Virus record (IMG/VR): IMGVR_UViG_3300009545_000018
Location: 1 to 64,000 of that record
Strand: one strand, 5' to 3'
DNA length: 64,000 nt
Made by a program: the position numbers and the translations under genes
Shown here: positions 1 to 15,176 of the stretch, piece by piece
Position numbering within the stretch: position 1 is the first letter of the stretch
Layout: each line of letters begins with the position of its first letter
The notes under the pieces: model-generated
Databases searched by the model: none
Told to the model about the DNA's origin: nothing
The model's input: the letters and a program-made list of their open reading frames with translations, nothing else

Positions 1-2
1 CC

Positions 3-1337
3 AAACCTTCTCATGCCAACATTGTTTTTGTTTTGGCGGATGATTTTTCCTGGGATTTGGTTCAGTACATGCCGCATTTGCAGCAAATGCAAAAAGATGG
101 CATCACTTTCCAAAATTACTTTGTCGCCAATTCTTTGTGTTGTCCTTCTAGGGCAACTATTTTCACTGGTCAATTTCCACACCACACTGGAATTTATACC
201 AATGTAGGACCAGATGGTGGCTTTGTTAAAGCTCTGACTAGTAATCTAGAAGATCGAATGTTTGCATCAACCCTACAAGGTGCAGGATATTCTACTAGCA
301 TGCTAGGTAAGTATCTGAATGGATACAATCCTCTGAAGAATCCTCCTCGTCCTAATTGGGATAACTGGATTGTTGCCGGTTATGGTTATAATGAATTTAA
401 CTATGATTTAAGTGTTAATGGTACAATTGAGCACCATGCTGCATTGCCTGAGGATTATCTGACTGATGTACTATCTACTAAAGCTCAGTCACTGCTTAGC
501 AATGAAGATCCATTCTTTTTGGAATTGGCAACCTTCGCGCCGCATGCTCCATATATTCCGGCTCCGCGGCATGCTGGTCAATTTGGCACACTGATGTATC
601 CACGCACGGCTGCCTTTGCGGCGCGTCCTAAAGATACCGATCCCATCTGGTTACAGGTAGTGCCAGCCTTGACAGATAACAACATTACATATATTGATCG
701 TGAGTATAAGTTGCGAGCGCGTTCGGTTCTGGCAATCGACGAAGCACTAGCTGCCTTGCGCGAAAAATTACCTCCCAACACCTACTTGTTTTTCAGTTCC
801 GATAATGGGTATCACATGGGAGAAAGGTCAATGAAGGCAGGCAAGCGCACGCCTTATGATTTCGATATTCGTGTACCTTTGATTGTTGTAGGTCCGGGAG
901 TGCCAGTTGGAGTTAATGTAAACGAAGTCACTCAGACTATTGACTTGTTTCCGACCTTTGCTGACATTGCTGGGGTGGCTATTCCTGCTACGGTTGATGG
1001 GCGCAGCCTATTGCCGCTCTTGCAAGGGGAGCATCCACCCTGGCGTAGTTATGCTCTGGTGGAGCATCATGGGGGACCACTTGACCCTAGTGATCCTGAC
1101 GCTTTAGACGAAGAGATTGGTGGTCCTCCTACTTATGGCGCATTGCGTTATGATAATAGCTTGTATGTAGAATATTCCAATGGTGACGTAGAGTATCATG
1201 ATTTGGCAACCGATCCACTGGAGCTTGACAATACAGTAGCAGCTTTGCCAGTTGCCAAGAAAAAAGCTCTAAGCTCCAAGCTAGCAGCTTTGCTTAACTG
1301 CAGTCCAGCAGATTGCTGGAATGTTTCTACCAAGTAA
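3..1337 (+). CDS. Sulfatase (N-acetylglucosamine-6-sulfatase-like), 5'-truncated by the window edge
   Basis: Frame is open from base 3: KPSHANIVFVLADD (NIVFxxxDD motif), CCPSR (CxPxR formylglycine motif), GKYLNG, SDNGYHMG, YDLxxDPxELxN. Confidence 0.9.
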   Translation, partial: KPSHANIVFVLADDFSWDLVQYMPHLQQMQKDGITFQNYFVANSLCCPSRATIFTGQFPHHTGIYTNVGPDGGFVKALTSNLEDRMFASTLQGAGYSTSMLGKYLNGYNPLKNPPRPNWDNWIVAGYGYNEFNYDLSVNGTIEHHAALPEDYLTDVLSTKAQSLLSNEDPFFLELATFAPHAPYIPAPRHAGQFGTLMYPRTAAFAARPKDTDPIWLQVVPALTDNNITYIDREYKLRARSVLAIDEALAALREKLPPNTYLFFSSDNGYHMGERSMKAGKRTPYDFDIRVPLIVVGPGVPVGVNVNEVTQTIDLFPTFADIAGVAIPATVDGRSLLPLLQGEHPPWRSYALVEHHGGPLDPSDPDALDEEIGGPPTYGALRYDNSLYVEYSNGDVEYHDLATDPLELDNTVAALPVAKKKALSSKLAALLNCSPADCWNVSTK

Positions 1338-1367
1338 CCCATCGAATAACGGAAGGAAGCGTATAGC

Positions 1368-1577
1368 ATGAGCCGAGACAATTTCATTGTTCAATTAGAT
1401 AATGCTTTAACTCTGCTGCGGATGACGCAACTGCGGCACAAAATGACAGGTCCTGAACTAAGCCTGTTAAACCTAGCAGTTCATCATGCCATTACCAAGA
1501 TTGATCAAGCGATTGGTCCTCCTGGTTTCGATACAGCGGCAGCATTTGAAGAATTCTTCGGACGCCCTTTGGAGTGA
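1368..1577 (+). CDS. hypothetical protein (leaderless-type)
   Basis: ATG 30 nt after motif start. Confidence 0.75.
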   Translation: MSRDNFIVQLDNALTLLRMTQLRHKMTGPELSLLNLAVHHAITKIDQAIGPPGFDTAAAFEEFFGRPLE

Positions 1578-1584
1578 GAAGTTT

Positions 1585-1617
1585 AAGGAGACTGGAAACA
1601 GTCTCCTTTTTCTTTTT
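1585..1617 (+). terminator. Rho-independent terminator
   Basis: AAGGAGACTG-GAAA-CAGTCTCCTT followed by a T-tract. Confidence 0.85.
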
Positions 1618-1625
1618 GTGGCTGG

Positions 1626-1660
1626 TGGTATTGTCTTTGCATATTGCATGACTCATGCCA
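1626..1660. promoter_or_regulatory. Face-to-face pair of sigma54-like -24/-12 sites, copy 1
   Basis: TGGTATTGTCTTTGCA (+, 1626-1641) and TGGCATGAGTCATGCA (-, 1645-1660), both GG-N10-GC. Confidence 0.55.
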
Positions 1661-1812
1661 CATACCGACAAATACCTCCCATCTAATAACGGTAAGGAAC
1701 CACTAATTGATTCTAGCTACTAAGAGTTAGCCTTAATAGTAGTTAGAAGTTGTACCATATGCTAACTATATGGTGCCCCATCTAATAACGGTAAGAGACA
1801 CCAAGTAAAAAC

Positions 1813-2055
1813 ATGCAAAAAGAATACTTCAAAGACATCGTAAGTAAATTGCCAGCCGAATCTTTTGCGGCTGAAGAGTTGCTTGTCATGGCAAGGCATC
1901 AATATCTGGAATGTGCTAAGGATTGTCTTAAACCAGGACGCGGCAAGAGTGACAATGAAGTTGGGTTTTATGCGCTCGAAGCTGCCATTCAACTACAAGA
2001 AACTATCGATGTTTTATTCTGGGATAAGAAAACTTCCCATCCAGTAACTGGTTAA
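1813..2055 (+). CDS. hypothetical protein, paralog of 38099..38314
   Basis: Shared ARHxYLxxAKDxLK...G...A...LQxxID. Confidence 0.8.
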   Translation: MQKEYFKDIVSKLPAESFAAEELLVMARHQYLECAKDCLKPGRGKSDNEVGFYALEAAIQLQETIDVLFWDKKTSHPVTG

Positions 2056-2065
2056 AGTATTAGTC

Positions 2066-2275
2066 ATGGCTGCTAAATGCAAAGGTTACAAGTTTGCGGT
2101 TGAATGTTGTGCTTTCAACGATGAATCTGCTGAGACAGATCTTGAAACCATATCGCAAACCATTAGTGTTAGTTTAGTAGCCGATTTGTTTGGAATACCT
2201 GCCGAAAAAGTAGCCGCTGCTGTTTTGAAGGTTCGCAATAAATCGGACAACTGGATCGATATTGGATATGAATAA
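2066..2275 (+). CDS. hypothetical protein
   Basis: ATG 30 nt after motif. Confidence 0.75.
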   Translation: MAAKCKGYKFAVECCAFNDESAETDLETISQTISVSLVADLFGIPAEKVAAAVLKVRNKSDNWIDIGYE

Positions 2276-2332
2276 TTTTGGGTATCTACCTTAAGAAAAT
2301 AACCCATCCTTTAACGGATAGAGATATTGAAT

Positions 2333-2515
2333 ATGAGAGATAATCAAATCGCAACAACTGAAGATGGTAGGATTTCCATTCCAGACGTTCAAATTTTCCG
2401 AGTAGAAAATGGTTGGAAGCCGGTACCACTACCAGGCTACAGTTATATTGTGGCGGTAGTTAATATGCAAGGTACTTGTATTGGTTGGATGAAGAATCCC
2501 AATCCCATCTTTTGA
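2333..2515 (+). CDS. hypothetical protein
   Basis: Start revised to the ATG 30 nt after motif 2303. Confidence 0.7.
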   Translation: MRDNQIATTEDGRISIPDVQIFRVENGWKPVPLPGYSYIVAVVNMQGTCIGWMKNPNPIF

Positions 2516-2533
2516 CGGATAGATATATCCTAT

Positions 2534-2761
2534 ATGACAATCTCTAGTGATATGAGTCGAGAGTGGGAATTGGAAGGTAAGCTGCATAGAACAGCAGGCG
2601 ATGCTTTTCGGCAATTAGTGCCATCTAAAGGCGGATGTTTGGTAGCAGCCACTGATGTTTATCTCCTGGCTCTTAAAACAGAGTTGCATAAGTGGATTGC
2701 TGAGATTGATCAAGAGTTACAAGAACGTTGTCAAGAAGAGAGCGACAATGAGTTTGGATGA
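2534..2761 (+). CDS. hypothetical protein
   Basis: ATG 30 nt after motif. Confidence 0.75.
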   Translation: MTISSDMSREWELEGKLHRTAGDAFRQLVPSKGGCLVAATDVYLLALKTELHKWIAEIDQELQERCQEESDNEFG

Positions 2762-2915
2762 ATTAAAAGAAAAGATTATTGCAACAGCTTTGGAATGGCG
2801 ATACTTGGATGAAATCGAGCCCATTCCCAGTAACAAGCCGGGCGAGAAACTGAGGGAGCTAGCTTTTCTACTAGATGAATTGAATGAATCCCATCTTATA
2901 ACGGATAAGTCATAA
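2748..2915 (+). CDS. hypothetical protein
   Basis: Internal ATG (MSLDELK) overlapping the end of the upstream gene. Confidence 0.6.
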   Translation: MSLDELKEKIIATALEWRYLDEIEPIPSNKPGEKLRELAFLLDELNESHLITDKS

Positions 2916-2920
2916 CAGTT

Positions 2921-3265
2921 ATGAAGTCTTTCAAAGTTGCTGCCAAAGAAGTGAAATGGTTGACTGAGCCAGCCTTTGCTAGCAAGAAACGAACCGTGAC
3001 AATTGAAGTCTCGGAAACCGTTAGCTTTTATAATACCTTCTGGGATGGTGGTAGTAAGAATACTTACAGGGCTGTTCGTCTGCTAGACGGCAAGGTAGCT
3101 GAACTGGAAACTGGTTCAAGTCCTTGGGCGGCTATTGCTGAGGGCAAAAGCATGACACTAGAGCCCGGCATTGCCATCGTAGAGGAAAGTGTTTTCTGTG
3201 GTAAAATAATGCCACTCAGGATTCATTTGCATCCTTCTAATATCACTCCCTTTCTCAAGGAGTAA
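2921..3265 (+). CDS. hypothetical phage protein (WDGGSK motif)
   Basis: ATG 31 nt after motif; 114 aa. Confidence 0.8.
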   Translation: MKSFKVAAKEVKWLTEPAFASKKRTVTIEVSETVSFYNTFWDGGSKNTYRAVRLLDGKVAELETGSSPWAAIAEGKSMTLEPGIAIVEESVFCGKIMPLRIHLHPSNITPFLKE

Positions 3266-3297
3266 TTCCCATCTTCTAACGGCAGAAGAGAATCAAT

Positions 3298-3513
3298 ATG
3301 ACAGAGCAAGAAATTTTAGATATGTGTGCTAAATATACTACGGTTGACAATGCTATTAGGTTGTTTAATAGTGGTCTTTTAGACACTATGTCTACTGCTT
3401 TGCTGAAGACTTGCCGTTATATTCGGTTTCAAGATGGTCATTATCGGGCGACACATGAAGGCGTTCTAGCTGGATTGAAATTTAATATTCAGATTCAAAA
3501 GATTGGGATTTGA
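3298..3513 (+). CDS. hypothetical protein
   Basis: ATG 30 nt after motif. Confidence 0.75.
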   Translation: MTEQEILDMCAKYTTVDNAIRLFNSGLLDTMSTALLKTCRYIRFQDGHYRATHEGVLAGLKFNIQIQKIGI

Positions 3514-3547
3514 TTATCCCATCTAATGACGGAAAGGTATAACTATC

Positions 3548-3892
3548 ATGGGTTGGTCTTGTAGAGCAGAAGCCGGAAATACTTTGAATGCGTGGCAAGA
3601 TGCTTGTTTTGCCCAAACTGGAATGGCTAATGTCTTTCTGAGTAAGGGAGGTAGCGAGCGCAATCAATTTGCTGGTGGTTCTAAGTACATGTTTGAAGTC
3701 TCCAATAAAGAGCATCATGATGGCGCCATTACTGGCAGCATTCAGCGCTTCGTTGATGACACTCACGTAGTTAAAGCTGGTAGCTTTCGAATTGAACCAG
3801 ACGGCACTGTGAGTAGGGCTCCTGCCTTTCTCAAAGCTATCAAGGGAAAGCTACTAACTAGAAACGGTATTGGTTCTGGTGGTCCCATCTAA
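3548..3892 (+). CDS. hypothetical protein
   Basis: ATG 30 nt after motif; stop codon lies inside the next motif. Confidence 0.8.
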   Translation: MGWSCRAEAGNTLNAWQDACFAQTGMANVFLSKGGSERNQFAGGSKYMFEVSNKEHHDGAITGSIQRFVDDTHVVKAGSFRIEPDGTVSRAPAFLKAIKGKLLTRNGIGSGGPI

Positions 3893-3913
3893 TAACGGAA
3901 TAAACCAATTAGT

Positions 3914-4138
3914 ATGAGTTTAATAACAGAACTTTCTTCTCTGAAAAAAGAGATCAATGAAATTTTCAATTCTAATATGTCATGGGAATTGAAGTATGAT
4001 TTGATCTTTAGCGAGAAGCTTTCACAACAAGTCTTCGAACTAGTCGATCTGGATTACTACGATCCTGATACTACCTATGAGGAAGACGTTACAGCTTTTG
4101 TCAAAGCCCTTAATGACAAATGTCAAGATCTATCATGA
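3914..4138 (+). CDS. hypothetical acidic protein (YYDPDTTYEED)
   Basis: ATG 30 nt after motif. Confidence 0.8.
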   Translation: MSLITELSSLKKEINEIFNSNMSWELKYDLIFSEKLSQQVFELVDLDYYDPDTTYEEDVTAFVKALNDKCQDLS

Positions 4139-4416
4139 AAAAAGAAACCTATCAAGCCGCCCGAAATCGTTTGATCCAAGAATTCAAAGACTTGGGATTT
4201 GTTGTCAAGGATACTTTAAAGGTTCCTCAAGTGGAATTGCCTACTGGCGAGACCCTTTTGTTCAAGGCACAAGCTGTCTACACCAAAAGCAACAAGCTTT
4301 CATTGTGGGTTGACATTCGTGGTATGAGTGCTAGGCAGCTAGCTATTAAAGCTGGCGTTCTGGTATCTACCTTGAATTGGATTGATGGCACGTCTCCTTC
4401 ACTTAAAGTAAAATAA
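4135..4416 (+). CDS. hypothetical protein
   Basis: ATGA coupling to upstream stop. Confidence 0.7.
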   Translation: MKKETYQAARNRLIQEFKDLGFVVKDTLKVPQVELPTGETLLFKAQAVYTKSNKLSLWVDIRGMSARQLAIKAGVLVSTLNWIDGTSPSLKVK

Positions 4417-4570
4417 TGTGTTCTAAATTATTCTACCAATTGGTCTGGAATTCCTTTGATGCTGCATTCAAAGAATATGTGTGGCATCAACACCATGCCA
4501 AACGTGATCATTGGCAATATTACTATCTAGGTTGTTAATCCCATCTACTAACGGATATACACATATGAAT

Positions 4571-4954
4571 ATGGAACTAACAATTCAATGTCCTCTGTAC
4601 CGAATTTCCTACCTACTATGTAGTGCCTTTGAAGGCGGAAGTAATTACTGGTACTCAATTAATTCCGACACTCCTCCACCCAATGGCGTTGATCTTTCCG
4701 CCTTTGACGGTCATTGGGACACAGTATATGCACATGTGCATTATCCCTTGTGTGCGGGGGGCAGCCTCACCATTAAAGATATGGAAGATAACAACAAAAC
4801 CTATACTCTATCTTTGAAAGAAATTGAACACGGGCTGAAAGTCTTCGCTGAGAAGTATCCTCGCCATTTTGGCAATTGGCTGAGTGAAGATGATGATGCT
4901 ATTACTGGCGATGTATTCTTACAATGCTGTCTTTTTGGTGAAGCTAAATACTAA
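4571..4954 (+). CDS. conserved-type phage hypothetical protein (EGGSNYW...DAITGDVFLQxxLFGE)
   Basis: Start revised to the ATG 31 nt after motif 4540. Confidence 0.8.
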   Translation: MELTIQCPLYRISYLLCSAFEGGSNYWYSINSDTPPPNGVDLSAFDGHWDTVYAHVHYPLCAGGSLTIKDMEDNNKTYTLSLKEIEHGLKVFAEKYPRHFGNWLSEDDDAITGDVFLQCCLFGEAKY

Positions 4955-4989
4955 TAATCCCATCTTTTAACGGTCTATACAGGTATAGT

Positions 4990-5274
4990 ATGAAACGTCT
5001 TAATCCCGACAAGATGCAAGCTGTAATTGAAAGCCTACAAAAGTGTGACGATTGCAGCAATTTCGCTACAACCAAAACTGGTGTTTGGGATTGCGAAGAG
5101 CACAATCTCTGTGACTTTCATTTGAAAGAACGTCGTACGGCACTTGTTGCGCGCTATGGTGATTCTTCCAAAGGAGATTGGGAAGTAGAATACCCTTATG
5201 CTAATGCCTTGCGCGCCCTATTTAATGTAACAGAGATTCCAACTGTTATTCATGACGATACTCCCATCATTTAA
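4990..5274 (+). CDS. hypothetical protein with CxxC...CxxH
   Basis: ATG 31 nt after motif. Confidence 0.75.
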   Translation: MKRLNPDKMQAVIESLQKCDDCSNFATTKTGVWDCEEHNLCDFHLKERRTALVARYGDSSKGDWEVEYPYANALRALFNVTEIPTVIHDDTPII

Positions 5275-5292
5275 CGGATAGAGATTGATACT

Positions 5293-5517
5293 ATGAAGAT
5301 TGAACAATTCCTATGGAAAACAGTTGTTAAAACTGGTCGAGAAGCTGACTTACTATTGCAACAACAACTTGTTCGTATTGTTAGTCCTAGCAAGACAACT
5401 GACGGACCAGGTTGGGATCGATTAGCAGAGTTTAATGAGGTTGTAAAGCCAACTGATACTGTCATGGTTTTCGACAAGAAAATTGGTTGGCAGACTATCA
5501 ATCATCCCTCGGAATAA
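5293..5517 (+). CDS. hypothetical protein
   Basis: ATG 30 nt after motif. Confidence 0.75.
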   Translation: MKIEQFLWKTVVKTGREADLLLQQQLVRIVSPSKTTDGPGWDRLAEFNEVVKPTDTVMVFDKKIGWQTINHPSE

Positions 5518-5519
5518 AT

Positions 5520-5756
5520 ATGTTGAAATGTATTAAAGTAGCTGATTACAGGAGGATGCCATTAGAAGTACGTACTTCTACTCTCTGCTACTTACGTGAT
5601 TTTTTTGGTGCGCCAGTAGGAACCTACTACATGAAAACGGTTCCAGGTCCAGCTGACAATAGTAGCTATCCTGCTTTAGATAATTGGTTAGTATCAGAAG
5701 GAGCCTTGTTAGGTGAGCCAGTTCTGATTAAGTTTGATAAGGTACCCATCTTTTAA
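5520..5756 (+). CDS. hypothetical protein
   Basis: ATG 2 nt after upstream stop. Confidence 0.65.
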   Translation: MLKCIKVADYRRMPLEVRTSTLCYLRDFFGAPVGTYYMKTVPGPADNSSYPALDNWLVSEGALLGEPVLIKFDKVPIF

Positions 5757-5774
5757 CGGATACAAATAACAAAT

Positions 5775-5894
5775 ATGCTGACAAATTATCACAAACAAAC
5801 TTGGCGTGGTAAAGTGTTCTTTTGGGCGACCTTACCACTAGCAATTGTTATTGTATCAGCAATGGCAGTAAAAGATCATTTCAATCGAGAATAG
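5775..5894 (+). CDS. 39-aa small membrane protein (not in ORF track)
   Basis: MLTNYHKQTWRGKVFFWATLPLAIVIVSAMAVKDHFNRE; ATG 30 nt after motif 5745, stop just before motif 5897. Confidence 0.7.
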   Translation: MLTNYHKQTWRGKVFFWATLPLAIVIVSAMAVKDHFNRE

Positions 5895-5926
5895 ATCCCA
5901 TCTGCTAACGGACGCTACCATTTGAT

Positions 5927-6136
5927 ATGACAAGGTTCGCAATTAAGAAGGGTGACAAGTTGATTTGTCTTACAACAACTCGCACAGACGGAAGCACGTT
6001 TAAGTGTTTCTATCTTTTCGAAACGGCAGCTGATTGGAATCTGTATAATGCATCTGGTAAACAGAAGTCTAATGTAGTTCGCACCTATGAAGAATATGAT
6101 GGTGAGAGCACTGTAGTTACTAACAATGGTGATTGA
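5927..6136 (+). CDS. hypothetical protein
   Basis: ATG 30 nt after motif. Confidence 0.75.
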   Translation: MTRFAIKKGDKLICLTTTRTDGSTFKCFYLFETAADWNLYNASGKQKSNVVRTYEEYDGESTVVTNNGD

Positions 6137-6174
6137 ATTTCCCATCTAATGACGGAAGTTATAATAGTTTTAAG

Positions 6175-6444
6175 ATGCCCGAAGAAAAAACAGTTGCGCA
6201 AAGGTTTGCAGAAAAAGCCAATCAAATAAATCTTGCCAAGATTGCAAGGGAAAAAGAATCTGCTGAAGAATCTTACAATAAGATCTTGAATCTTATAGAA
6301 GAAGAATCTCAAAAGGGCGAATATAAACTTGCCCTTCCTCCTAATTGTAATCCATCTTCTTTTCTTCGAGAAAGAATTTGTAGTGATGGATTTGATCTTA
6401 CATGCTTTGATAAAGTGTGGATTATTTCTTGGCAAAATAAATAA
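6175..6444 (+). CDS. hypothetical protein, distantly similar to 60857 and 61156
   Basis: Start revised; shared I...A/S.KG...GF...ISW pattern. Confidence 0.7.
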   Translation: MPEEKTVAQRFAEKANQINLAKIAREKESAEESYNKILNLIEEESQKGEYKLALPPNCNPSSFLRERICSDGFDLTCFDKVWIISWQNK

Positions 6445-6614
6445 TGAAAAATATTTTACGTACTTTTCATCATTGGGTAGAGCGCCCTTGTGTTGCTGTA
6501 ATTTATCGACAGAATCGTGCTCGACGTGAAAGGCAAGACTTTAAAGCGCCTTGGTGGTTTTCTTTAGCATCCAAGGTAGAATTCAAGCTACGCTATCTTT
6601 ACAAAAAATCTTAA
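6444..6614 (+). CDS. 56-aa hypothetical protein (not in ORF track)
   Basis: TAATG coupling; stop abuts motif 6616. Confidence 0.55.
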   Translation: MKNILRTFHHWVERPCVAVIYRQNRARRERQDFKAPWWFSLASKVEFKLRYLYKKS

Positions 6615-6645
6615 TCCCATCTGATAACGGAGTCAACCAGTTATT

Positions 6646-6897
6646 ATGACTAAAATAGTTAGTATTTATAAATGCCAAGATGATACATTTAAAGTAGATC
6701 TTTCAATATCTTTTCAAGTTATTACTAATGGTTATTTTACTCCAGAGCAAGATGCTACTTTCAAAATTAGACACTTGAGGGGCTTTACTCAAGAGCAAGC
6801 GGAATCTATTGTAGGCTTGGTAAATAGTTGTTATGACATGGGTTATGTGCAAGCTCAACGAGACCTTGCCAATCGTTTAGGTTTTAGGTTTAAATAA
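6646..6897 (+). CDS. hypothetical protein
   Basis: ATG 30 nt after motif. Confidence 0.75.
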   Translation: MTKIVSIYKCQDDTFKVDLSISFQVITNGYFTPEQDATFKIRHLRGFTQEQAESIVGLVNSCYDMGYVQAQRDLANRLGFRFK

Positions 6898-6963
6898 CCC
6901 ATCGGATAACGGCGTGAGATAACAAACGAGTCTTGCAAAAACCAAAGGAAAACAAAACTGTCA

Positions 6964-7110
6964 ATGAGTTTTAATCAGCAAACGGTTTCTAGACTAGGTG
7001 TCGCTAATCGTCCGGGCGACTATGATGCCAAAACCTTTATGGCAAAGGGGCGGCGTGCCAAAGATCGAAACGAGCAAATGTTTGCTATCAATGGATATAC
7101 TGTCGTCTGA
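6964..7110 (+). CDS. 48-aa hypothetical protein (not in ORF track)
   Basis: Motif 6898, AAAGGA SD-like sequence, MSFNQQTVSRLG... Confidence 0.55.
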   Translation: MSFNQQTVSRLGVANRPGDYDAKTFMAKGRRAKDRNEQMFAINGYTVV

Positions 7111-7292
7111 CTGCTATTCGAAATGATTTGAGTTTACTAGTTAAGTAAATATTACAATTAAATACTAAGCATGACATGTAGGCAGAGTCTTTAAACGCCT
7201 ATTGTCTCAATAAGACATAGAGGGTTTGGTGATCTCCCAAGAGTGAAAACACCATTTTATTTCCCATCTTTTAACGGATGTATGCAACAAGT

Positions 7293-7541
7293 ATGACTAA
7301 GAAAGAAAAAATTAAGTTTCTTCAATCTCTTGTTAAAGATCCAGATATGCTTGGACATGCACGCCAATCAATTGAAGATCATTTGATTGAGTTTCGTGAT
7401 AGGAGAATTTCTCAACCGTTTCGTGGCAATGGTCTGGTTGTTAGGGAACCTAACGGTAAACCTTCTGATATTATCAGACTTGGTACGGAAGATGCTGTTC
7501 GAATTGGTTTGCTTGCTATTATTGAGAAGTTAAATGGTTAA
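7293..7541 (+). CDS. hypothetical protein
   Basis: Start revised to the ATG 30 nt after motif 7263. Confidence 0.8.
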   Translation: MTKKEKIKFLQSLVKDPDMLGHARQSIEDHLIEFRDRRISQPFRGNGLVVREPNGKPSDIIRLGTEDAVRIGLLAIIEKLNG

Positions 7542-7857
7542 GACAGTTCAACAAATTTTGTACATGACTACTTACACTCCCAGCATTCGTTCTGAGGTAG
7601 ATGGCTGGACTTTTGAATGTGGTGATGTTGATATGGATAAGGTGCTTCAAGATCCCAACATTCATGTTGGATTTTTGAAAGGTTGGGAGGCGGGACTTTA
7701 TTATCATCCCAAAACTCCCGCCCATGCTTTACGATTAGGTTGGAAGCTTTTGGCTCCACCAGAAAAATTTGACATGGGTTTAGAAAAATATCCTTGGGGT
7801 TGGCACTGGATTATGGTTAGGGAAGTAGAAACCAACATGCTAGGTGCTTATAAATGA
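7534..7857 (+). CDS. hypothetical protein
   Basis: Overlap-coupled ORF. Confidence 0.75.
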   Translation: MVKTVQQILYMTTYTPSIRSEVDGWTFECGDVDMDKVLQDPNIHVGFLKGWEAGLYYHPKTPAHALRLGWKLLAPPEKFDMGLEKYPWGWHWIMVREVETNMLGAYK

Positions 7858-8093
7858 AATATACTTTAATTGGTGGAATTACACTTAAATCAAACACTGG
7901 CACTACTACGTATACTGGTCTAAAAGTAATTGGTAGTTCTTACACCGAAAATGGAATCAAAGATTTATGGAATAAAAACTATGAAGCTTGCGGTGGACTA
8001 CTGCTAGTGCTAGATGCTGAAGGTCGAGAGACTTATCCAGAAATCATCTATGATGCGATTAAACACAAAGCAGCTTATCAAATCGAATCTTGA
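7854..8093 (+). CDS. hypothetical protein
   Basis: ATGA coupling; followed by terminator. Confidence 0.7.
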   Translation: MKYTLIGGITLKSNTGTTTYTGLKVIGSSYTENGIKDLWNKNYEACGGLLLVLDAEGRETYPEIIYDAIKHKAAYQIES

Positions 8094-8096
8094 ACT

Positions 8097-8132
8097 AAAG
8101 ACCCTGAGCTTAAACAGTTCGGGGTCTTTTTT
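8097..8132 (+). terminator. Rho-independent terminator
   Basis: AAAGACCCTGAGCT-TAAAC-AGTTCGGGGTCTTT plus T-tract. Confidence 0.85.
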
Positions 8133-8143
8133 ATTTTGAGGTA

Positions 8144-8178
8144 TGGTATTGCTTTTGCATAATGCAGCAATCGTACCA
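8144..8178. promoter_or_regulatory. Face-to-face pair of sigma54-like -24/-12 sites, copy 2
   Basis: TGGTATTGCTTTTGCA (+, 8144-8159) and TGGTACGATTGCTGCA (-, 8163-8178). Confidence 0.55.
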
Positions 8179-8320
8179 CCACCTACCACTACTTACAAAA
8201 TGCCACACTGAAACTATTGCTAGTGAAAAAGTGTCTCCCATCATCAAACGGCTGACGGCGCTATTTGCAACACAATGTCAGAATACCACACTGACAACAC
8301 CCTTACCTCAGGAATATGTA

Positions 8321-8548
8321 ATGAAAGTTTTTACTGACGAATTTGTAAACGCTGTTAAAGGCAAACTGGAAACTCTTCCGGATGGTGATTATTTGACGCG
8401 AGAGAAGCTTTGCATTGCCATTAACGTTCCAGCAGTGTATGCCAATGCCATTAGCATGTTGATGGCTCAACCGGAGTTTAGTGGTTTTGAAGCCGTCAAG
8501 AGCCGAGGCATTCGACGTAAAAAGATTCAGCCGATTGCTGCTGAGTAA
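8321..8548 (+). CDS. putative winged-helix DNA-binding protein
   Basis: AGGA SD; helical body with a basic wing FEAVKSRGIRRKK, resembling the 12403 family. Confidence 0.6.
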   Translation: MKVFTDEFVNAVKGKLETLPDGDYLTREKLCIAINVPAVYANAISMLMAQPEFSGFEAVKSRGIRRKKIQPIAAE

Positions 8549-8610
8549 TTTTGCTACAATAGCTCCCATCACATAACGGAACCTATTTCCTATCTAAAGG
8601 AGATAGGAAT

Positions 8611-8916
8611 GTGAAGATTAAAATTCCGTTTTACAATCGTCTGGGTCAACAAGTAGCTGAACTGGACCACGACATTGGTCGTGGTTTTTTCTTAGTTGAA
8701 TTTCAGCAACCATTACAAAATAGGGAAGTAAGAATTTTCCCTTATAAATGGGAGATTACCGAAGATAACGGGCAAAGCGCTGCTGGAGCTTTAAAAGAAG
8801 CTCTCCGCTTTGCCTGTGATCTGCAAAAGAATTCCCATCCTCAACGGATGCTGATGCTTAATGTTCTTGGAGATAATCTCCGAAAGATAATTCATACACT
8901 TCATAGTAGGAACTAA
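8611..8916 (+). CDS. hypothetical protein
   Basis: GTG start with AGGA SD after motif 8565. Confidence 0.7.
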   Translation: MKIKIPFYNRLGQQVAELDHDIGRGFFLVEFQQPLQNREVRIFPYKWEITEDNGQSAAGALKEALRFACDLQKNSHPQRMLMLNVLGDNLRKIIHTLHSRN

Positions 8917-9066
8917 TATGCAACTTCCTCCTCTAATTGATTTTAATTTAGTGTTTGTTCCTTTTGCCAAAATTCATTTTGATGTAACGGCTAATTGCAT
9001 TGATAGTGTAGTTTACATCTTTGGAATTAGAGTGGCATATTGGGTAGCACTTAGGGAAATTTAATA

Positions 9067-9414
9067 ATGAATATCGATCCTGTTCGAGAAAATCTATTAA
9101 AAAGTTATTCTTCCAGAGAATATGGAACTTGGGAGATTTTGGGCGAAGATCCTAATTGTGATTTTAGTGGACCTCATAGTCAACCACGACTAATGATTGT
9201 AACTGGAACTTATCACAATGTGATAGAATATGCCTTGTCACTCAAAGGATTTATCCAGTGGGGTACCGGCGGATCTATCAATAAGATTATAGCGAGGCTA
9301 GATGTTGATCATCTTTATTCTGCTGAAGCTGCAGAGCTAAAGAATAAAAAAGCAAAGCTAGAAAAAGAATTGGCTGAAATTTCTTCCAAACTGGAAAAGA
9401 TTTACAAAAAATAA
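9067..9414 (+). CDS. phage hypothetical protein (GEDPNCD motif, C-terminal coiled coil)
   Basis: 115-aa ORF ending at motif 9417. Confidence 0.8.
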   Translation: MNIDPVRENLLKSYSSREYGTWEILGEDPNCDFSGPHSQPRLMIVTGTYHNVIEYALSLKGFIQWGTGGSINKIIARLDVDHLYSAEAAELKNKKAKLEKELAEISSKLEKIYKK

Positions 9415-9447
9415 TTCCCATCTATTAACGGACGTGTGTCTCTTAAC

Positions 9448-9708
9448 ATGAAGAGTCAAGTTTACAGCATCTTAAGCGGAGAGCAGATTGAAGTTACTTT
9501 CCCAAGTACTTTAGCTCCACCCAGTAAGCATCCATTACGTCGCCATTCTGGTGTTATCGTAAAGAATAGTCTGACCAATAAGATCGAAACTGGAACTATT
9601 GTCTCTCACTTGACACTAAGTGAATGGTCAGTAGTCAATGGCTACCAAGTTATCGACTATGGGCGTACCTATAAGGCTCGTCCAAGTGAAATAACACGGT
9701 TGTTTTAA
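9448..9708 (+). CDS. hypothetical protein
   Basis: Start revised to the ATG 31 nt after motif. Confidence 0.75.
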   Translation: MKSQVYSILSGEQIEVTFPSTLAPPSKHPLRRHSGVIVKNSLTNKIETGTIVSHLTLSEWSVVNGYQVIDYGRTYKARPSEITRLF

Positions 9709-9759
9709 CCGCAGAATTTAACTGCGCCGCACTTACCCATCCTATAACGGACCACAATA

Positions 9760-9996
9760 ATGAATGTATTATTCGATAATGCCTGCGGTAAGTTTCATAT
9801 TTGTGCTATTGAAAGATTCAATGGTGGAAAGATTAGTGAATGCGCTGTAATCTATCGATATGGTGCTGTAGTACTAAAAGAACTTACCTTTCCTCCGGAG
9901 AAGAGCCAGGTTGCAATCGATATTGCTTCACATATTTTTGATGCGATTGAAACATATCATGATTATGTCGTCTGTGATTTTGCTGACAGTATGTGA
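9760..9996 (+). CDS. hypothetical protein
   Basis: Bounded by motifs 9736 and 9997. Confidence 0.7.
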   Translation: MNVLFDNACGKFHICAIERFNGGKISECAVIYRYGAVVLKELTFPPEKSQVAIDIASHIFDAIETYHDYVVCDFADSM

Positions 9997-10026
9997 CCCA
10001 TCAAATAACGGAATGATTCATAAGTT

Positions 10027-10275
10027 ATGACACAATTTCATCGTAGGAGTGTTGGTAACTACCAAATTGTAGTAAAAGAGGATACTCATGGCTATCCAGT
10101 TTTGGAATATGGTTATGGTGAAAATCCAAAACAACTTCGCCACTTTCATAAAAATGAAATTGGAACTGCAGTAGACGAAGCTAATTTCATTGCAGACATA
10201 ATTAAAGAATATCGTAGTAATTTAGTAAATCAAATCGGAAAACTGTTACAAGAAGAATATATTACTAAATTGTAA
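10027..10275 (+). CDS. hypothetical protein
   Basis: ATG 30 nt after motif. Confidence 0.75.
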   Translation: MTQFHRRSVGNYQIVVKEDTHGYPVLEYGYGENPKQLRHFHKNEIGTAVDEANFIADIIKEYRSNLVNQIGKLLQEEYITKL

Positions 10276-10648
10276 TCCCATCAATTAACGGATGAATATT
10301 TAAAATGAAATTAAAGAATATCTGGAAAAGAATCAAAGATTATATTTTAGATGTTAAAGCCACTTGGGACTACACTACCAATGAAGGTGGGCAATTTGGG
10401 GCAGCAGATATTCCTGATAAAAATTTAAAGCAAGAAAAAGAATCATAACAAACGAGTAAATTTGATATGTCACGTCGTATTACAGAGCTAGCAGTCATTC
10501 AAAAACAAGATCCTACTCGTCTTAGAATCCGAACCGTTGAGACGGAACGACGGAAGCAGGTTAAGTCTCGAGCCCGCCGTAAAGAAGCTTGGCGCAAAGA
10601 TCCCATCAATTAACGGCAGAAAGACATAAAACAGAAGGAGAAAAGAAA

Positions 10649-10831
10649 ATGCTGAAATATCTAGTAATCGGTCTGGCAATGATTGGCAGTGCATATCTTC
10701 TGATGGTATATGCCAATCCGCTCTGGCAAAAGGTAGCATTCACCACAAATCTAACCGGGGCAGTTTCATATGCCACTTGTGTTTTGATTGCTGTTGCGTG
10801 TTTCCTGTTTACCAAACTTGCCACTAAGTAA
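10649..10831 (+). CDS. small two-TM membrane protein
   Basis: AAGGAG SD; two hydrophobic segments. Confidence 0.75.
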   Translation: MLKYLVIGLAMIGSAYLLMVYANPLWQKVAFTTNLTGAVSYATCVLIAVACFLFTKLATK

Positions 10832-10850
10832 AAATAAACAAGACTCTTTT

Positions 10851-10960
10851 GGGTTGAACCTAACTAGCCACTACATAGCAGTAAATCCTTATTAGGTTGC
10901 TACAAGTAGCAAGACAGGCAAGTCAGCTGGCATTAGGCTGTAAGAGTGTGCTCTAAACCC
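10851..10960 (+). ncRNA. candidate multibranch structured RNA
   Basis: GGGTT/AACCC closing stem around several hairpins (AACCTAA/TTAGGTT, TGCTAC/GTAGCA, AGAG/CTCT). Confidence 0.35.
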
Positions 10961-10975
10961 ACTATTGTAAATTAC

Positions 10976-11149
10976 ATGAAATTCAATAATAAAACTCACC
11001 TTTACGATCCTCAGTGTACTTGTCACGCTTGTTCTCAATTTGAGATTAGCTTGAAAGACATGATTCAAAGGGAACGGGAATATCGTCCTCATTGGTCGGA
11101 GCTGGGACGACCCGTATCTGAAAAGACTTTCAAGAAACCCATCGCTTAA
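10976..11149 (+). CDS. hypothetical protein (CxCxxC)
   Basis: Internal ATG; stop inside motif 11138. Confidence 0.55.
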   Translation: MKFNNKTHLYDPQCTCHACSQFEISLKDMIQREREYRPHWSELGRPVSEKTFKKPIA

Positions 11150-11162
11150 CGGATAAGACACT

Positions 11163-11579
11163 ATGATTGAACTTGGAAAGAAAGTTAGGTTTGAATACGA
11201 TAACAATTACTACGCAGGTATTGTTATTATTATCAATCATGCATTAACAAATTGTATTGTATCTAGTCTTGATCCTATTTTAAATAATCCTGTATTTGAA
11301 GCTTGCCAACTAGGCGATCACGTAGATAAAAGTTGGTGTGGTAATCATTTTGAGTGTGTGGATAATATCTCTGATTACCATCATAAGTGGCATGGTTGGT
11401 TTCAAATGGGTGATCTTGAAGTTGTTGAGCCTCAGGTGTTTTCTCCACGCACAGACACTATTGATGGTTGCAATTGCAAGACTTGCGGTCAGTTCACTTT
11501 TATGGCAGCCGCTAATCAAAGTGATGGAACCTTCAAGTGTTATTCGTGTAGAAATAATCCAATTCGAACGTACTACTAA
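11163..11579 (+). CDS. protein with C-terminal zinc ribbon (CxxC...NQxDGTFxCxxC)
   Basis: Module shared with 22991 and 60348. Confidence 0.8.
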   Translation: MIELGKKVRFEYDNNYYAGIVIIINHALTNCIVSSLDPILNNPVFEACQLGDHVDKSWCGNHFECVDNISDYHHKWHGWFQMGDLEVVEPQVFSPRTDTIDGCNCKTCGQFTFMAAANQSDGTFKCYSCRNNPIRTYY

Positions 11580-11611
11580 TTCCCATCCATTAACGGATTG
11601 AACTAAATAGT

Positions 11612-11920
11612 ATGACTGAATGGAATAAAGAAAAACTCATCAATCTACTTACAGTCAATGATAAAGCTGTAGAGCTTGCCATTGTAATTATCTACAATCG
11701 CCAGACTTTAGAGGAACAATCTTTGGAAAAAACTAAACATCACAATGGAATTGGTTTCACAGGATGGCACGCTAGTCTAGGAACCTATTACGCAAAATGG
11801 ATTTTGCGAGGTAAGTCTCTTAGTGGTCAGCAGCTAGCCAAAGCTCGTAAGATTGCTTTGAGTTATACGTCTCAGCTCTTGGACGAAATTAAGAGCAAAC
11901 AACATCATGCCGCTCTATAG
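11612..11920 (+). CDS. phage hypothetical protein, paralog of 28747..29049
   Basis: NDKAV...QTxEEQ...NxxGF...ARxIALxY. Confidence 0.85.
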   Translation: MTEWNKEKLINLLTVNDKAVELAIVIIYNRQTLEEQSLEKTKHHNGIGFTGWHASLGTYYAKWILRGKSLSGQQLAKARKIALSYTSQLLDEIKSKQHHAAL

Positions 11921-11927
11921 GGCGGAA

Positions 11928-12003
11928 GTCACCTAGTCAGTTGAGGTTACCCGAATAAAAAGGGGGCTATTGCAATAGTTGCCGATGAAACTGGCTAGGT
12001 GGC
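11928..12003 (+). ncRNA. candidate structured RNA with kink-turn
   Basis: 15-bp stem GTCACCTAGTCAGTT/AACTGGCTAGGTGGC, GA / GAT-GA internal loop, two inner hairpins. Confidence 0.45.
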
Positions 12004-12052
12004 GGTACTAATTTCCCATCAGATAACGGATAAGATAGTGAGATAGAGATAA

Positions 12053-12136
12053 GCTACTGTGGTGGAACTGGCATACACAGTTGATTTAAAATCAACCGCC
12101 GTAATTGGCTTGGGGGTTCAAGTCCCTCCAGTAGCA
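12053..12136 (+). tRNA. tRNA-Leu(UAA), CCA not encoded
   Basis: GCTACTG/CAGTAGC acceptor stem, GTTGA-TTTAAAA-TCAAC anticodon arm, long variable arm, GGGGG-TTCAAGT-CCCTC T arm. Confidence 0.9.
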
Positions 12137-12154
12137 CTAAAAAAAGTAAGTAAC

Positions 12155-12277
12155 ATGAAGGATAGCAGTAGGCACAAAAATGACAGCGCAGATTTTCTGT
12201 ATGGTGCCGCTTGGTGCATCATTGGATGCCTGAGCATTCTGGCAGTGTTGGCTGGCATTGCAGTCTGGTTTAAATAA
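12155..12277 (+). CDS. small membrane protein
   Basis: Start moved downstream of the tRNA; one TM segment. Confidence 0.55.
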   Translation: MKDSSRHKNDSADFLYGAAWCIIGCLSILAVLAGIAVWFK

Positions 12278-12402
12278 AACAAGTTCAATCTTCCCATCAG
12301 ATAACGGTGGTAAGCAGTAAGATGTAAGAGCGGCGAAGACGACAGGATGTCGACGAAGTCTCTCGAAAATAAACAAAAACAAAAAACAAAGGAAGTAACA
12401 AA

Positions 12403-12759
12403 ATGGATCTAAATAAGTTGGTTGTGCGTAGTGGTGGTTTGGTTGATGTGACTGCGACTCTCAAGGCTTGTGGTGAGGCTCTCACTGCTGCCAATACGGA
12501 AGCGCAAGAGGCGTTTGCTGCGGTTGGTCCCGCGGTTGATGCGGTGTTTGCGAAGCATGCTGGTAGCAGCATCAATATGCCTGCTATCGAGTCATTCGTG
12601 GTTGCCGAGCTTGGCACTTCGCCTGCCAAGTATAAGGAGACTGCGGAGTTGGTTTCTAACTACGTTCGCGCCAATGCTGGTGAGAATGGTAAGTTTGAAA
12701 TCCGCAAGGGTAAGGGCGGCGGCGTTCGCCTCCGTGCCACGGCTGCTGCCGCGGAGTAA
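12403..12759 (+). CDS. putative winged-helix / nucleoid-type DNA-binding protein, KGKGGG family copy 1
   Basis: Strong SD after an A-rich leader; FEIRKGKGGGVRLR wing; paralogs at 15401 and 21779. Confidence 0.75.
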   Translation: MDLNKLVVRSGGLVDVTATLKACGEALTAANTEAQEAFAAVGPAVDAVFAKHAGSSINMPAIESFVVAELGTSPAKYKETAELVSNYVRANAGENGKFEIRKGKGGGVRLRATAAAAE

Positions 12760-13830: not shown

Positions 13831-13833
13831 TAC

Positions 13834-14172: not shown

Positions 14173-14175
14173 CGG
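14161..14175 (+). promoter_or_regulatory. CCCATC-N3-TAACGG motif
   Basis: CCCATCCTCTAACGG; ATG 33 nt on. Confidence 0.8.
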
Positions 14176-14193
14176 GTCACTGTATCTTTCTAT

Positions 14194-14466: not shown

Positions 14467-14468
14467 AT

Positions 14469-15099: not shown

Positions 15100-15137
15100 T
15101 ACATACTCACGTACGCGAACGCAGGCGTGTGTTTGAA

Positions 15138-15161: not shown

Positions 15162-15176
15162 GGCCAAAATTAATCT

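What the first reader, a model, noticed from the sequence alone, without database searches (positions are those of the whole stretch)
1626..1660. Two 35-bp face-to-face sigma54-like double sites (1626-1660 and 8144-8178), each just after a terminator
Seen: identical architecture of 16 + 3 + 16 bp. TGGTATTGYYTTTGCA lies on +, and TGGCATGAGTCATGCA or TGGTACGATTGCTGCA lies on -. All four half-sites keep GG-N10-GC. Established: this is the RpoN -24/-12 consensus TGGCACG-N4-TTGC. Inference: convergent sites only 3 bp apart could not both fire, so they may be sigma54-holoenzyme decoys or roadblocks, a switch, or the inverted-repeat site of another dimeric protein or recombinase. More TGGCA/TGGTA boxes cluster at 4361-4520 with imperfect -12 elements.
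Basis: partly seen in the sequence, partly recalled or inferred. Interest (0 to 1): 0.6.

Follow-up and report, generated by a model that had tools for sequence, protein, structure and literature searches.

The report
Face-to-face sigma-54 promoter pairs in phage
The two 35-bp sites are real and belong to a set of 11 in a 448-kb soil phage; each pairs two sigma-54-type promoter sequences head to head at the start of an operon, an arrangement found in hundreds of phage contigs but in bacterial genomes only about as often as chance predicts.

Summary
Observation confirmed. The window is the first 64 kb of a 447,763-bp virus record. TGGYAY-N6-TGCA-N3-TGCA-N6-RTRCCA occurs at 1626 and 8144 (0.01 expected by chance) and 11 times in the genome. 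All 11 lie in one ~22-kb stretch of a ~30-kb module of tiny + strand genes that runs across the record ends.

The layout repeats: terminator, ~10 bp, site, 10-60 bp, a CCCATC-N3-TAACGG motif, gene. Huge-phage relatives of quite different GC keep the same layout.

The half-sites match the RpoN -24/-12 consensus even at positions my search pattern left free. Face-to-face pairs with 2-5 bp spacers fill 55-88 IMG/VR loci per spacing, against 1-3 for control geometries and 10 in 596 Gb of bacterial genomes.

In small phages the pairs sit at divergent gene junctions (47 divergent, 5 convergent). Single half-sites point into genes (212:63). Pseudomonas Pakpunaviruses carry one pair, and PAK_P4 has an RNA-seq-annotated minus-strand RNA starting there.

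Best reading, inferred not shown: overlapping bidirectional sigma-54-class promoters read by host RNA polymerase. Here the gene-directed half is the operon promoter. The pairs are not convergent: the predicted start sites diverge, about 18 bp apart. No phage RpoN or enhancer-binding protein was found, so the activator is unknown.

The parts
1585..1619 (+). Intrinsic terminator of the preceding operon (hairpin 1585-1608 plus T-run)
   Evidence: 10-pair stem, tail TTTCTTTTTG; sequence
1626..1660 (.). Double site 1: 16 + 3 + 16 bp, face-to-face sigma-54-type halves
1626..1641 (+). Gene-directed half TGGTATTGTCTTTGCA (GG 1627-1628, GC 1639-1640); predicted start about 1652, rightward
   Evidence: matrix score 20.4; the start site is inferred from the standard -24/-12 geometry
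1645..1660 (-). Opposing half TGGCATGAGTCATGCA; predicted start about 1634, leftward, into the terminator hairpin
   Evidence: score 17.5; start site inferred
1678..1692 (+). First copy of the per-gene motif (C)CCATC-N3-TAACGG downstream of site 1; a second copy lies at 1777-1791
1813..2055 (+). First gene of the operon (80 aa, no Pfam match)
8097..8139 (+). Intrinsic terminator of the preceding operon (hairpin 8097-8129 plus T-run)
   Evidence: 14-pair stem
8144..8178 (.). Double site 2: 16 + 3 + 16 bp
8144..8159 (+). Gene-directed half TGGTATTGCTTTTGCA; predicted start about 8170, rightward
   Evidence: score 18.7; start site inferred
8163..8178 (-). Opposing half TGGTACGATTGCTGCA; predicted start about 8152, leftward
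   Evidence: score 19.1; start site inferred
8237..8251 (+). Variant copy of the per-gene motif (CCCATCATCAAACGG) downstream of site 2
8321..8548 (+). Probable first gene after site 2. The ATG at 8321 is in frame with ORF 8162-8548, whose listed start lies inside the site. 75 aa, no Pfam match

Best explanation
Each 35-bp element is a pair of overlapping, face-to-face sigma-54-class (-24/-12) promoters read by the host RNA polymerase with RpoN.

In this phage the 11 elements are the operon promoters of a ~30-kb module. The module runs from 433.3 kb through the record end to about 15 kb of the window and holds roughly 100 very small + strand genes. The left, gene-directed half (TGGYAY-N5-TTGCA) positions the polymerase to start about 12 nt past the GC and to transcribe the operon.

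The right half is a second docking site in the opposite orientation. It shares the region that must melt, so only one polymerase can sit there at a time, and the two predicted start sites diverge by about 18 bp. In phages with two divergent gene arms the same element works as a true bidirectional promoter. In this one-directional module the opposing half most likely competes with or tunes the productive half. It may also make a short leftward RNA that runs into the upstream terminator hairpin.

Shown: the sequence architecture, its conservation, its restriction to phages, and its position relative to genes. The activator that sigma-54 normally requires is unidentified.
For: (1) Half-sites equal the RpoN consensus beyond what was searched for. 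In 570 halves from IMG/VR pairs the free positions read T (55%) before TGG, G/A at position 7 (94%), purine at 8 (66%) and T at 12 (76%).

(2) In the own genome the sites are the only conserved intergenic element at operon starts. They lie 7-12 bp after terminators and upstream of the first gene. Sigma-70-like promoters are not enriched there (39 found, 42 expected).

(3) The phage has no RNA polymerase of its own, so a host polymerase must read them.

(4) Relatives G001, G002 and G003 (433-481 kb, different GC) keep the order terminator, site, CCCATC motif, gene. The gene-directed half is stricter: T12 in 37/40 sites against the mirrored A24 in 22/40, and mismatches concentrate in the right half.

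(5) Geometry is specific. IMG/VR loci per spacer: N1 13, N2 88, N3 82, N4 64, N5 55, N8 3; back-to-back control 1. Bacterial genomes: 10 loci in 596 Gb.

(6) The same loci hold about 630 genuinely single half-sites (about 9 expected), co-oriented with the downstream long ORF 212:63.

(7) Pairs lie at divergent, one-directional and convergent junctions in the ratio 47:31:5. In five complete 40-45-kb phages all sites sit in the single divergent control region.

(8) Pakpunaviruses of Pseudomonas carry one N2 pair, conserved across phages of three host species. The PAK_P4 record annotates an RNA-seq-based minus-strand RNA at 55650-55850 that starts at the pair at 55823-55856.

(9) Precedent: phage YuA depends on host sigma-54 for some promoters.
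Against: No canonical activator or RpoN is encoded by the phage. There is no Sigma54_activat or Sigma54_DBD match and no GAFTGA or RpoN-box motif in the own genome or in 14 other site-bearing phages.

There is no room for an upstream enhancer, because a terminator lies about 10 bp away.

The host is unknown, so the presence of rpoN cannot be checked.

There are no RNA data for this phage.

In this genome half-sites never occur singly, and spacing is fixed within a lineage (N3 here, N5 in the huge phages G011/G012). A dimeric binding protein would also explain both facts.

In some relatives the right half has lost the GC (TACA, AGCA, TGCG), so it cannot always be a working sigma-54 promoter.

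The PAK_P4 RNA coordinates are coarse: its 5' end is drawn about 20 nt outside the predicted start.
Confidence: 0.55

Rival explanations
1. The 35-mer is the operator of a phage-encoded dimeric or tetrameric DNA-binding protein. This would be a global repressor or activator of the module, in the manner of KorB or phage repressors. Its half-site happens to equal, or derives from, the sigma-54 DNA-binding specificity, for example a diverged RpoN-like DNA-binding domain.
For: The consensus is perfectly two-fold symmetric while the variable positions are not self-complementary, so the site is read as DNA by a protein and is not a hairpin. In this genome halves are always paired. Spacing is lineage-specific. 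Small phages carry tandem arrays of 2-4 pairs within 300-600 bp, which look like operator arrays. Some right halves lack the GC yet keep the outer TGCCA.
Against: No protein family other than DNA polymerase A is shared by the three small-phage families that carry the sites. No Sigma54_DBD-like ORF was found in 15 phages. No DNA-binding domain was found in 10 sampled module proteins. Abundant single half-sites co-oriented with genes and the asymmetry toward the gene side are what promoters predict, not what a symmetric operator predicts. The match to the RpoN consensus at 5 free positions would be a coincidence.
Confidence: 0.2
2. The sites bind RpoN or its holoenzyme but are not used to start transcripts. 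They act as stable closed-complex roadblocks or insulators just after terminators, or as decoys that titrate host sigma-54.
For: Sigma-54 holoenzyme forms long-lived closed complexes without an activator (established knowledge; PMC5095919 abstract). No activator was found. Eight of the 11 sites sit 7-12 bp after a terminator.
Against: The operons would then have no promoter at all. No sigma-70-like element is conserved there. A roadblock or decoy needs neither pairing nor a fixed spacer. In other phages the pairs favour divergent junctions and the singles point into genes. A minus-strand RNA starts at the PAK_P4 pair.
Confidence: 0.12
3. The sites are replication or partition elements (iteron- or parS-like) clustered in one genome region, unrelated to transcription.
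For: Eleven palindromic sites cluster in about 5% of the genome. The first two (433362 and 433538, the second inverted) flank an AT-rich 140-bp stretch. The Pakpunavirus pair lies in a repeat-rich 620-bp intergenic region.
Against: The sites have a strict position and orientation relative to terminators, the per-gene motif and gene starts. The gene-side half is favoured. The half-site consensus matches RpoN.
Confidence: 0.06

Closest known systems
Bacterial sigma-54 (RpoN) -24/-12 promoters (consensus YTGGCACGr-N3-TTGCW)
   Same: Same GG-N10-GC spacing and same flanking preferences at every informative position. The sites lie upstream of genes and are co-oriented with them.
   Different: Here two such promoters are fused head to head with a 2-5 bp spacer, an arrangement found in bacterial genomes only at about the level expected by chance (10 loci in 596 Gb). 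No enhancer site and no enhancer-binding protein is evident.
Symmetric bidirectional sigma-70 promoters (Warman et al., bioRxiv 10.1101/2020.01.31.928960; PMC12825309)
   Same: Promoter elements lie on opposite strands around one shared melting region. The divergent start sites are close together: the modal distance is 18 bp for sigma-70, and the prediction here is 21 minus the spacer, so 18 bp for N3. One binding event excludes the other.
   Different: Those arise from the intrinsic symmetry of overlapping -10 hexamers of sigma-70. Here two complete 16-bp sigma-54 elements abut without overlapping. The class is enhancer-dependent and the arrangement is specific to phages.
Sigma-54-dependent late promoters of Pseudomonas phage YuA (Ceyssens et al. 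2008, as cited in 10.1101/2023.10.13.562163)
   Same: A phage that uses host RpoN for part of its programme. The record NC_010116 annotates three -24/-12 promoters.
   Different: The YuA sites are single and weak matches, and the genome has no face-to-face pair. They are a few structural-gene promoters, not a module-wide system.
Global palindromic operator networks (KorB sites on RK2, ParB-parS). This comparison is from general knowledge and was not tested here.
   Same: About a dozen copies of one palindrome, placed in promoter regions of one replicon region.
   Different: Those have a cognate element-encoded binding protein and no resemblance to a sigma-factor consensus. No such protein was found here.

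Membership tests
Sigma-54 (RpoN) dependent promoter | GG and GC doublets exactly 10 bp apart within TGGCAC-N5-TTGCW | tested here: met
   All 22 halves of the 11 own sites keep GG. Twenty-one of 22 keep GC (the exception is the right half at 433380, with GA).
Sigma-54 (RpoN) dependent promoter | Extended consensus at flanking positions (Y before TGG, G/r after TGGCAC, T before TGC) | tested here: met
   570 halves: T 55% at position 0, G 59%/A 35% at position 7, purine 66% at position 8, T 76% at position 12. In the own clade T12 is present in 37/40 gene-side halves.
Sigma-54 (RpoN) dependent promoter | Lies upstream of a gene or operon and is co-oriented with it | tested here: met
   The own sites lie between a terminator and the first gene. 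Single sites in other phages are co-oriented 212:63.
Sigma-54 (RpoN) dependent promoter | Transcription depends on RpoN; start about 12 nt past the GC | not testable with these tools
   No RNA run holds this phage. The host is unknown. Only indirect support exists: the PAK_P4 minus-strand RNA annotated at the homologous type of site.
Sigma-54 (RpoN) dependent promoter | An AAA+ enhancer-binding protein and, usually, upstream enhancer sites | tested here: not met
   No PF00158 match above cut-off and no GAFTGA motif in the own genome. There was none in the other phages checked apart from one Walker-A-only partial match at the cut-off in G005 (20.8 vs 20.2 bits). A terminator lies about 10 bp upstream, so there is no room for an enhancer. 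A host activator cannot be excluded.
Bidirectional (symmetric) promoter | Promoter elements on both strands around one melting region, with closely spaced divergent starts | tested here: inconclusive
   The sequence geometry is met: the predicted starts are 18 bp apart (inference; compare). Starts are not mapped. The PAK_P4 antisense RNA as16 starts at the pair.
Bidirectional (symmetric) promoter | Preference for divergent gene junctions | tested here: met
   In other phages the ratio is 47 divergent, 31 one-directional, 5 convergent, and 5 of 5 complete small phages show it. It is not met in this phage, where the genes on both sides run on the + strand.
Operator of an element-encoded dimeric regulator | A cognate DNA-binding protein encoded by all elements that carry the site | tested here: not met
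   Only DNA polymerase A is shared by the three small-phage families. No Sigma54_DBD was found. No DNA-binding domain appeared in 10 module proteins. Small, fast-evolving proteins could have escaped these searches.

The most novel reading that the evidence does not exclude
Face-to-face pairing is a phage invention that lets sigma-54 promoters fire without a conventional enhancer and enhancer-binding protein. A second RpoN or holoenzyme docked on the opposing half, or an unrecognised phage factor that reads the pair, would help open the shared -12 region. That would be a new way of activating the one bacterial polymerase form thought to be strictly ATPase-dependent. It would also be a phage-wide regulatory code for early or accessory modules.
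Probability: 0.12. Interest if true: 0.9.

Novelty: new variant of a known kind. Interest (0 to 1): 0.7.

Why it matters
Sigma-54 promoters are normally single, silent until an ATPase bound at a distant enhancer opens them, and rarely reported in phages. Here a head-to-head pair of them appears as a recurrent architecture that is almost confined to phages. It occurs in at least about 300 IMG/VR loci, from 40-kb podovirus-like genomes to 480-kb huge phages, and also in common therapeutic-type Pseudomonas phages.

Many phages place whole gene modules or their central divergent control region under the host's enhancer-dependent polymerase. Bidirectional promoters would exist for the second sigma family. 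And an activator or bypass mechanism remains to be found.

The question is directly testable in P. aeruginosa, where rpoN mutants and phages PAK_P4, K5 and PaoP5 exist. I found no paper describing the arrangement in six full-text searches, but that is not proof that none exists.

Tried and rejected
- **Chance:** rejected.
- **RNA or DNA hairpin or cruciform:** rejected, because the variable positions of the two arms are not complementary.
- **Sigma-70 promoter hidden in the site:** no conserved -35 or -10, and no enrichment.
- **Bacteroidota-type TAnnTTTG promoter:** not present at the sites and not enriched in the genome.
- **Promoter of a phage RNA polymerase:** none is encoded.
- **Promoter of the phage sigma-70-family factor (209 aa, about 382.6 kb):** the small phages with the same sites have no such factor.
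- **Phage-encoded RpoN, enhancer-binding protein, GAFTGA motif or RpoN box:** none found. The weak AAA hit at 192.4 kb is a generic ATPase without the signature loop.
- **Cultured relatives of site-bearing contigs:** SIO1, BcepC6B and YuA were scanned and have no pairs. DNA searches with two control regions found nothing.
- **Host SrpA palindrome of phage K5 (PMC5945682):** a different sequence, unrelated.
- **Transcript evidence:** only DNA runs hold this phage (rhizosphere and soil). The supplements of the ONT-cappable-seq paper are not held.
- **Gene-junction classification with naive ORF calls:** too noisy, so it was redone with long ORFs only.
- **Host assignment:** left open. Gene starts are A-rich with few Shine-Dalgarno sequences, while TTGACA and TGnTATAAT are enriched in the other intergenic regions. 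These signals conflict.
- **Not used:** the big protein searches, structure prediction and complex prediction were not used. No alternative genetic code was needed.

Full report
**What is there.** The pattern TGGYAY-N6-TGCA-N3-TGCA-N6-RTRCCA matches only at 1626 and 8144 in the window, where shuffles give 0.01. All four strict half-sites of the window are inside these two sites. Each site lies 7-12 bp after one of the two strongest intrinsic terminators of window 1-16000.

**Genome context.** The window is the first 64 kb of a 447,763-bp IMG/VR virus record, CheckV 100%, with no end repeats.
- The record holds 11 such sites (up to 1 mismatch): 1626, 8144, 433362, 433538, 433901, 434674, 435851, 437012, 438786, 440661 and 443693. 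The reversed control pattern gives none.
- Sixteen of the 17 strict half-sites in the genome are inside pairs.
- A weight matrix finds no further credible site.
- The sites fall within one module that crosses the record ends, from 433.3 kb through the end to about 15 kb. The record is therefore permuted or circular.
- The module has 42% GC against about 30% elsewhere, and about 100 very small + strand genes.
- A 48.6-kb IMG/VR contig from another sample (loci L055, L081) carries identical sites.
- The only sequencing runs that hold the DNA are a rhizosphere metagenome (the probable source) and, for a small share of its words, a soil metagenome. No RNA run does.

**Anatomy.**
- Eight of the 11 sites follow the same plan: terminator hairpin with T-run, 7-12 bp, the 35-mer, 10-60 bp, a motif (C)CCATC-N3-TAACGG, then a gene.
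- The first two sites (433362 and 433538, the latter inverted) open the module around an AT-rich stretch. The site at 438786 follows a hairpin that has no T-run.
- No other element is conserved around the sites, and information content is near zero outside positions 1-35.
- Sigma-70-like promoters are not enriched in window 1-16000 (39 found, 42 expected).
- The variable positions of the two arms are not complementary. The element is therefore read as duplex DNA by protein and is not a hairpin.

**Who could read it.**
- The phage has no beta-like or T7-like RNA polymerase.
- It has one sigma-70-family ORF of 209 aa next to the ribonucleotide reductase small subunit.
- It has no Sigma54_DBD, no Sigma54_activat, no GAFTGA loop and no RpoN box.
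- The weak AAA hit at 192.4 kb is a generic ATPase.
- Ten module proteins show no DNA-binding domain.
- Transcription therefore depends on the host core polymerase.

**Relatives.**
- An exact-pattern scan of IMG/VR gave 82 loci.
- Several are huge phages with many sites: G001 (433 kb, 11 sites), G002 (452 kb with terminal repeats, 7 sites at 412-445 kb), G003 (481 kb), G004 and G005.
- With flanks fetched, G001-G003 show the same order of terminator, pair, CCCATC-type motif and gene. Their sequence and GC are quite different.
- Across 40 oriented sites of this clade the gene-directed half is stricter. T12 is present in 37/40 sites against the mirrored A24 in 22/40, and nearly all mismatches fall in the right half. 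In some sites the right half has lost the GC (TACA, AGCA, TGCG).
- These relatives also lack RpoN and enhancer-binding proteins. Like this phage, each has a small sigma-70-family factor.

**A general phage architecture.**
- Most IMG/VR hits are not relatives. They are contigs of 5-480 kb with 27-65% GC.
- Their free positions follow the published RpoN consensus: T before TGG, G/A then purine after TGGCAC/T, and T before TGC.
- The geometry is specific. Face-to-face pairs give 13 loci (N1), 88 (N2), 82 (N3), 64 (N4) and 55 (N5). N8 gives only 3 and a back-to-back control gives 1.
- Spacing is lineage-specific. Other huge phages (G011, 395 kb; G012, 236 kb) use N5.
- The N3 pattern occurs only 10 times in 596 Gb of bacterial and archaeal genomes, about the chance level, and several of those hits are on short MAG contigs.

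**Position relative to genes elsewhere.**
- Five complete 40-45-kb phages from three families share only DNA polymerase A and have no sigma factor. In all five, every site lies in the one divergent intergenic region between a leftward arm and a rightward arm of small genes. In G006 and G009 the leftward arm carries the terminase genes. The sites form arrays of 2-4 pairs plus single sites.
- Across all fetched loci, 62% of 1,676 strict halves are in pairs and about 630 are genuinely single, against about 9 expected.
- Singles are co-oriented with the next long ORF 212:63.
- Pairs with long ORFs on both sides lie at divergent, one-directional and convergent junctions in the ratio 47:31:5 in contigs under 150 kb.
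- Divergent and convergent junctions must be about equally common in any genome. The 47:5 ratio is therefore what a two-way promoter predicts.

**A cultured example.**
- One N2 hit is Pseudomonas phage C2-10_Ab02.
- The element TGGCACAGTCTTTGCAATTGCAATTAGCGTGCCA, plus a single site about 150 bp upstream, lies in a 620-bp intergenic region of the early gene region. The region that holds it matches in 134 Pseudomonas phage records, including K5, K8, PAK_P4, PaoP5 and JG004.
- Phages of P. putida and P. protegens conserve only the roughly 100 bp around the pair.
- The PAK_P4 record carries an RNA-seq-based minus-strand RNA, as16, at 55650-55850. The pair is at 55823-55856, so leftward transcription begins at or very near it.
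- The as16 coordinates are rounded and lie about 20 nt outside the predicted start.
- The paper places gp080-gp124 in the early class and reports that antisense RNAs are stronger early (PMC5563952).
- PAK_P3 has two single sites back to back, 134 bp apart.
- Use of host sigma-54 by a phage has a precedent in YuA, but YuA has no pairs.

**Mechanism proposed.**
- With GC at -12, the + half of an N3 pair starts at about position 27 of the 35-mer and the - half at about position 9. The starts diverge by about 18 bp, and by 21 minus N in general.
- This is the geometry of the symmetric sigma-70 bidirectional promoters, whose modal distance is 18 bp.
- The two -12 elements flank a 5-bp, mostly A/T core. 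That core would be the nucleation point of melting for either orientation.
- Two holoenzymes cannot sit there together, so each binding event excludes the other.
- In two-armed phages this gives a compact two-way promoter and a possible switch between arms.
- In the present phage the gene-side half drives the operon. The opposing half, conserved but looser, most likely modulates occupancy, or produces a short leftward RNA that meets the upstream hairpin.
- All of this is inference. What is shown is the sequence, its conservation, its specificity to phages and its position.

**What does not fit.**
- Sigma-54 needs an ATPase activator, and none is encoded by these phages. Here there is also no room for an enhancer.
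- The activator is therefore either a host one acting from solution, an unrecognised phage factor, or a property of the pair itself. The last is the novel case.
- In this genome halves never occur singly, and the spacer is lineage-fixed. A dimeric reader would also explain both facts, so I keep that rival at 0.2.

The TGGCA/TGGTA words at 4361-4520 have no -12 partners and do not score. Only a 19-bp palindrome, TGGCAT-N7-ATGCCA (4482-4500), stands out there.

**Literature.** Six full-text searches found sigma-54 biology, YuA and sigma-70 bidirectional promoters. None described face-to-face sigma-54 pairs in phages.

**Limits.** The host is unknown. There are no RNA data. My ORF calls are simple longest-ORF calls. 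The IMG/VR counts are loci with exact matches to one strict pattern, so they are lower bounds.

Noticed in passing
window 1339-57131 (40 copies, e.g. 1679, 1778, 2304, 2891, 3269); genome 433608-447529 and 76022: A second, much more abundant motif, TCCCATC-NNN-TAACGG. It has 84 copies in the genome, all on the + strand. In most copies it ends exactly 15-16 nt before the start codon, and the start context is TAATATG. It precedes nearly every small gene of the module and is sporadic up to 76 kb. There is no Shine-Dalgarno sequence between motif and ATG and no consistent hairpin. Relatives have lineage variants: cccatcNNNtaat in G001, cccatcctctaa in G002, ctcccattcac in G003. It looks like a per-gene RNA signal for translation control or processing by a phage factor.
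   Followed up: partly
window 1-16000 versus 16001-64000; genome 433.3-447.7 kb: The module with the sites has about 39-42% GC against 27-33% in the rest of the genome. It also uses different signals: sigma-54-like pairs and the CCCATC motif there, against TTGACA/TGnTATAAT-enriched intergenic regions and A-rich gene starts elsewhere.
   Followed up: partly
window 3-1337 (+): A 444-aa open frame that runs off the window start is a sulfatase (Pfam Sulfatase, 5e-45, plus SGSH_C). This is an unusual auxiliary gene for a phage, and it sits inside the small-gene module.
   Followed up: no
window 4482-4500: A short palindrome, TGGCATcaacaccATGCCA, lies in a 120-bp gap before the motif copy at 4541. 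It has the outer arms of a double site without the inner TGCA elements, so it may be a decayed site.
   Followed up: no
window 12053-12137, 24593-24669, 60656-60744, 60749-60831: Four tRNA genes: Leu-taa (two copies), Ile-tat and Gln-ttg, all of which read A/T-ending codons.
   Followed up: no
window 29629-30369, 40279-41190, 44056-45183, 47333-47992, 49501-50676: Recognisable genes in the 30% GC part of the window: an R2K-clade ATP-grasp protein, DUF7277/DUF7275, an RNA ligase with OB fold, a calcineurin-like phosphoesterase and a subtilase.
   Followed up: no
genome 382,573-383,202 (locus L106 1327-1956): The phage encodes one sigma-70-family factor of 209 aa, next to a ribonucleotide reductase small subunit. 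All five huge-phage relatives have a similar ORF of 206-244 aa. The genome also encodes a DnaE-type polymerase, a type IA topoisomerase, a gpA-like terminase and the ribonucleotide reductase large subunit.
   Followed up: partly
genome 433362-433572: The module opens with two double sites 141 bp apart, the second in inverted orientation. They flank a very AT-rich stretch, which could be an origin or the physical start of the module.
   Followed up: no
terminators upstream of the sites at 433901, 435851, 443693 and 8144: About half of the terminator hairpins that precede the sites also have an A-tract on their 5' side. They would therefore also stop a leftward transcript coming from the opposing half-site (read by eye).
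   Followed up: no
L343 2050-2300 (Pseudomonas phage C2-10_Ab02, 80.55-80.8 kb): The Pakpunavirus intergenic region that holds the pair also contains several direct repeats (ggacagatttttagg..., gttagca...ct...). It ends with a strong sigma-70-like promoter (TTGACA...) before an SprT-like gene.
   Followed up: no
L042, L044, L048, L065 (SIO1-like contigs), just left of the pair: A Fur-box-like palindrome (aatgcgaATGATTATCATTATCaat) lies about 20 bp upstream of the double site in four related contigs.
   Followed up: no
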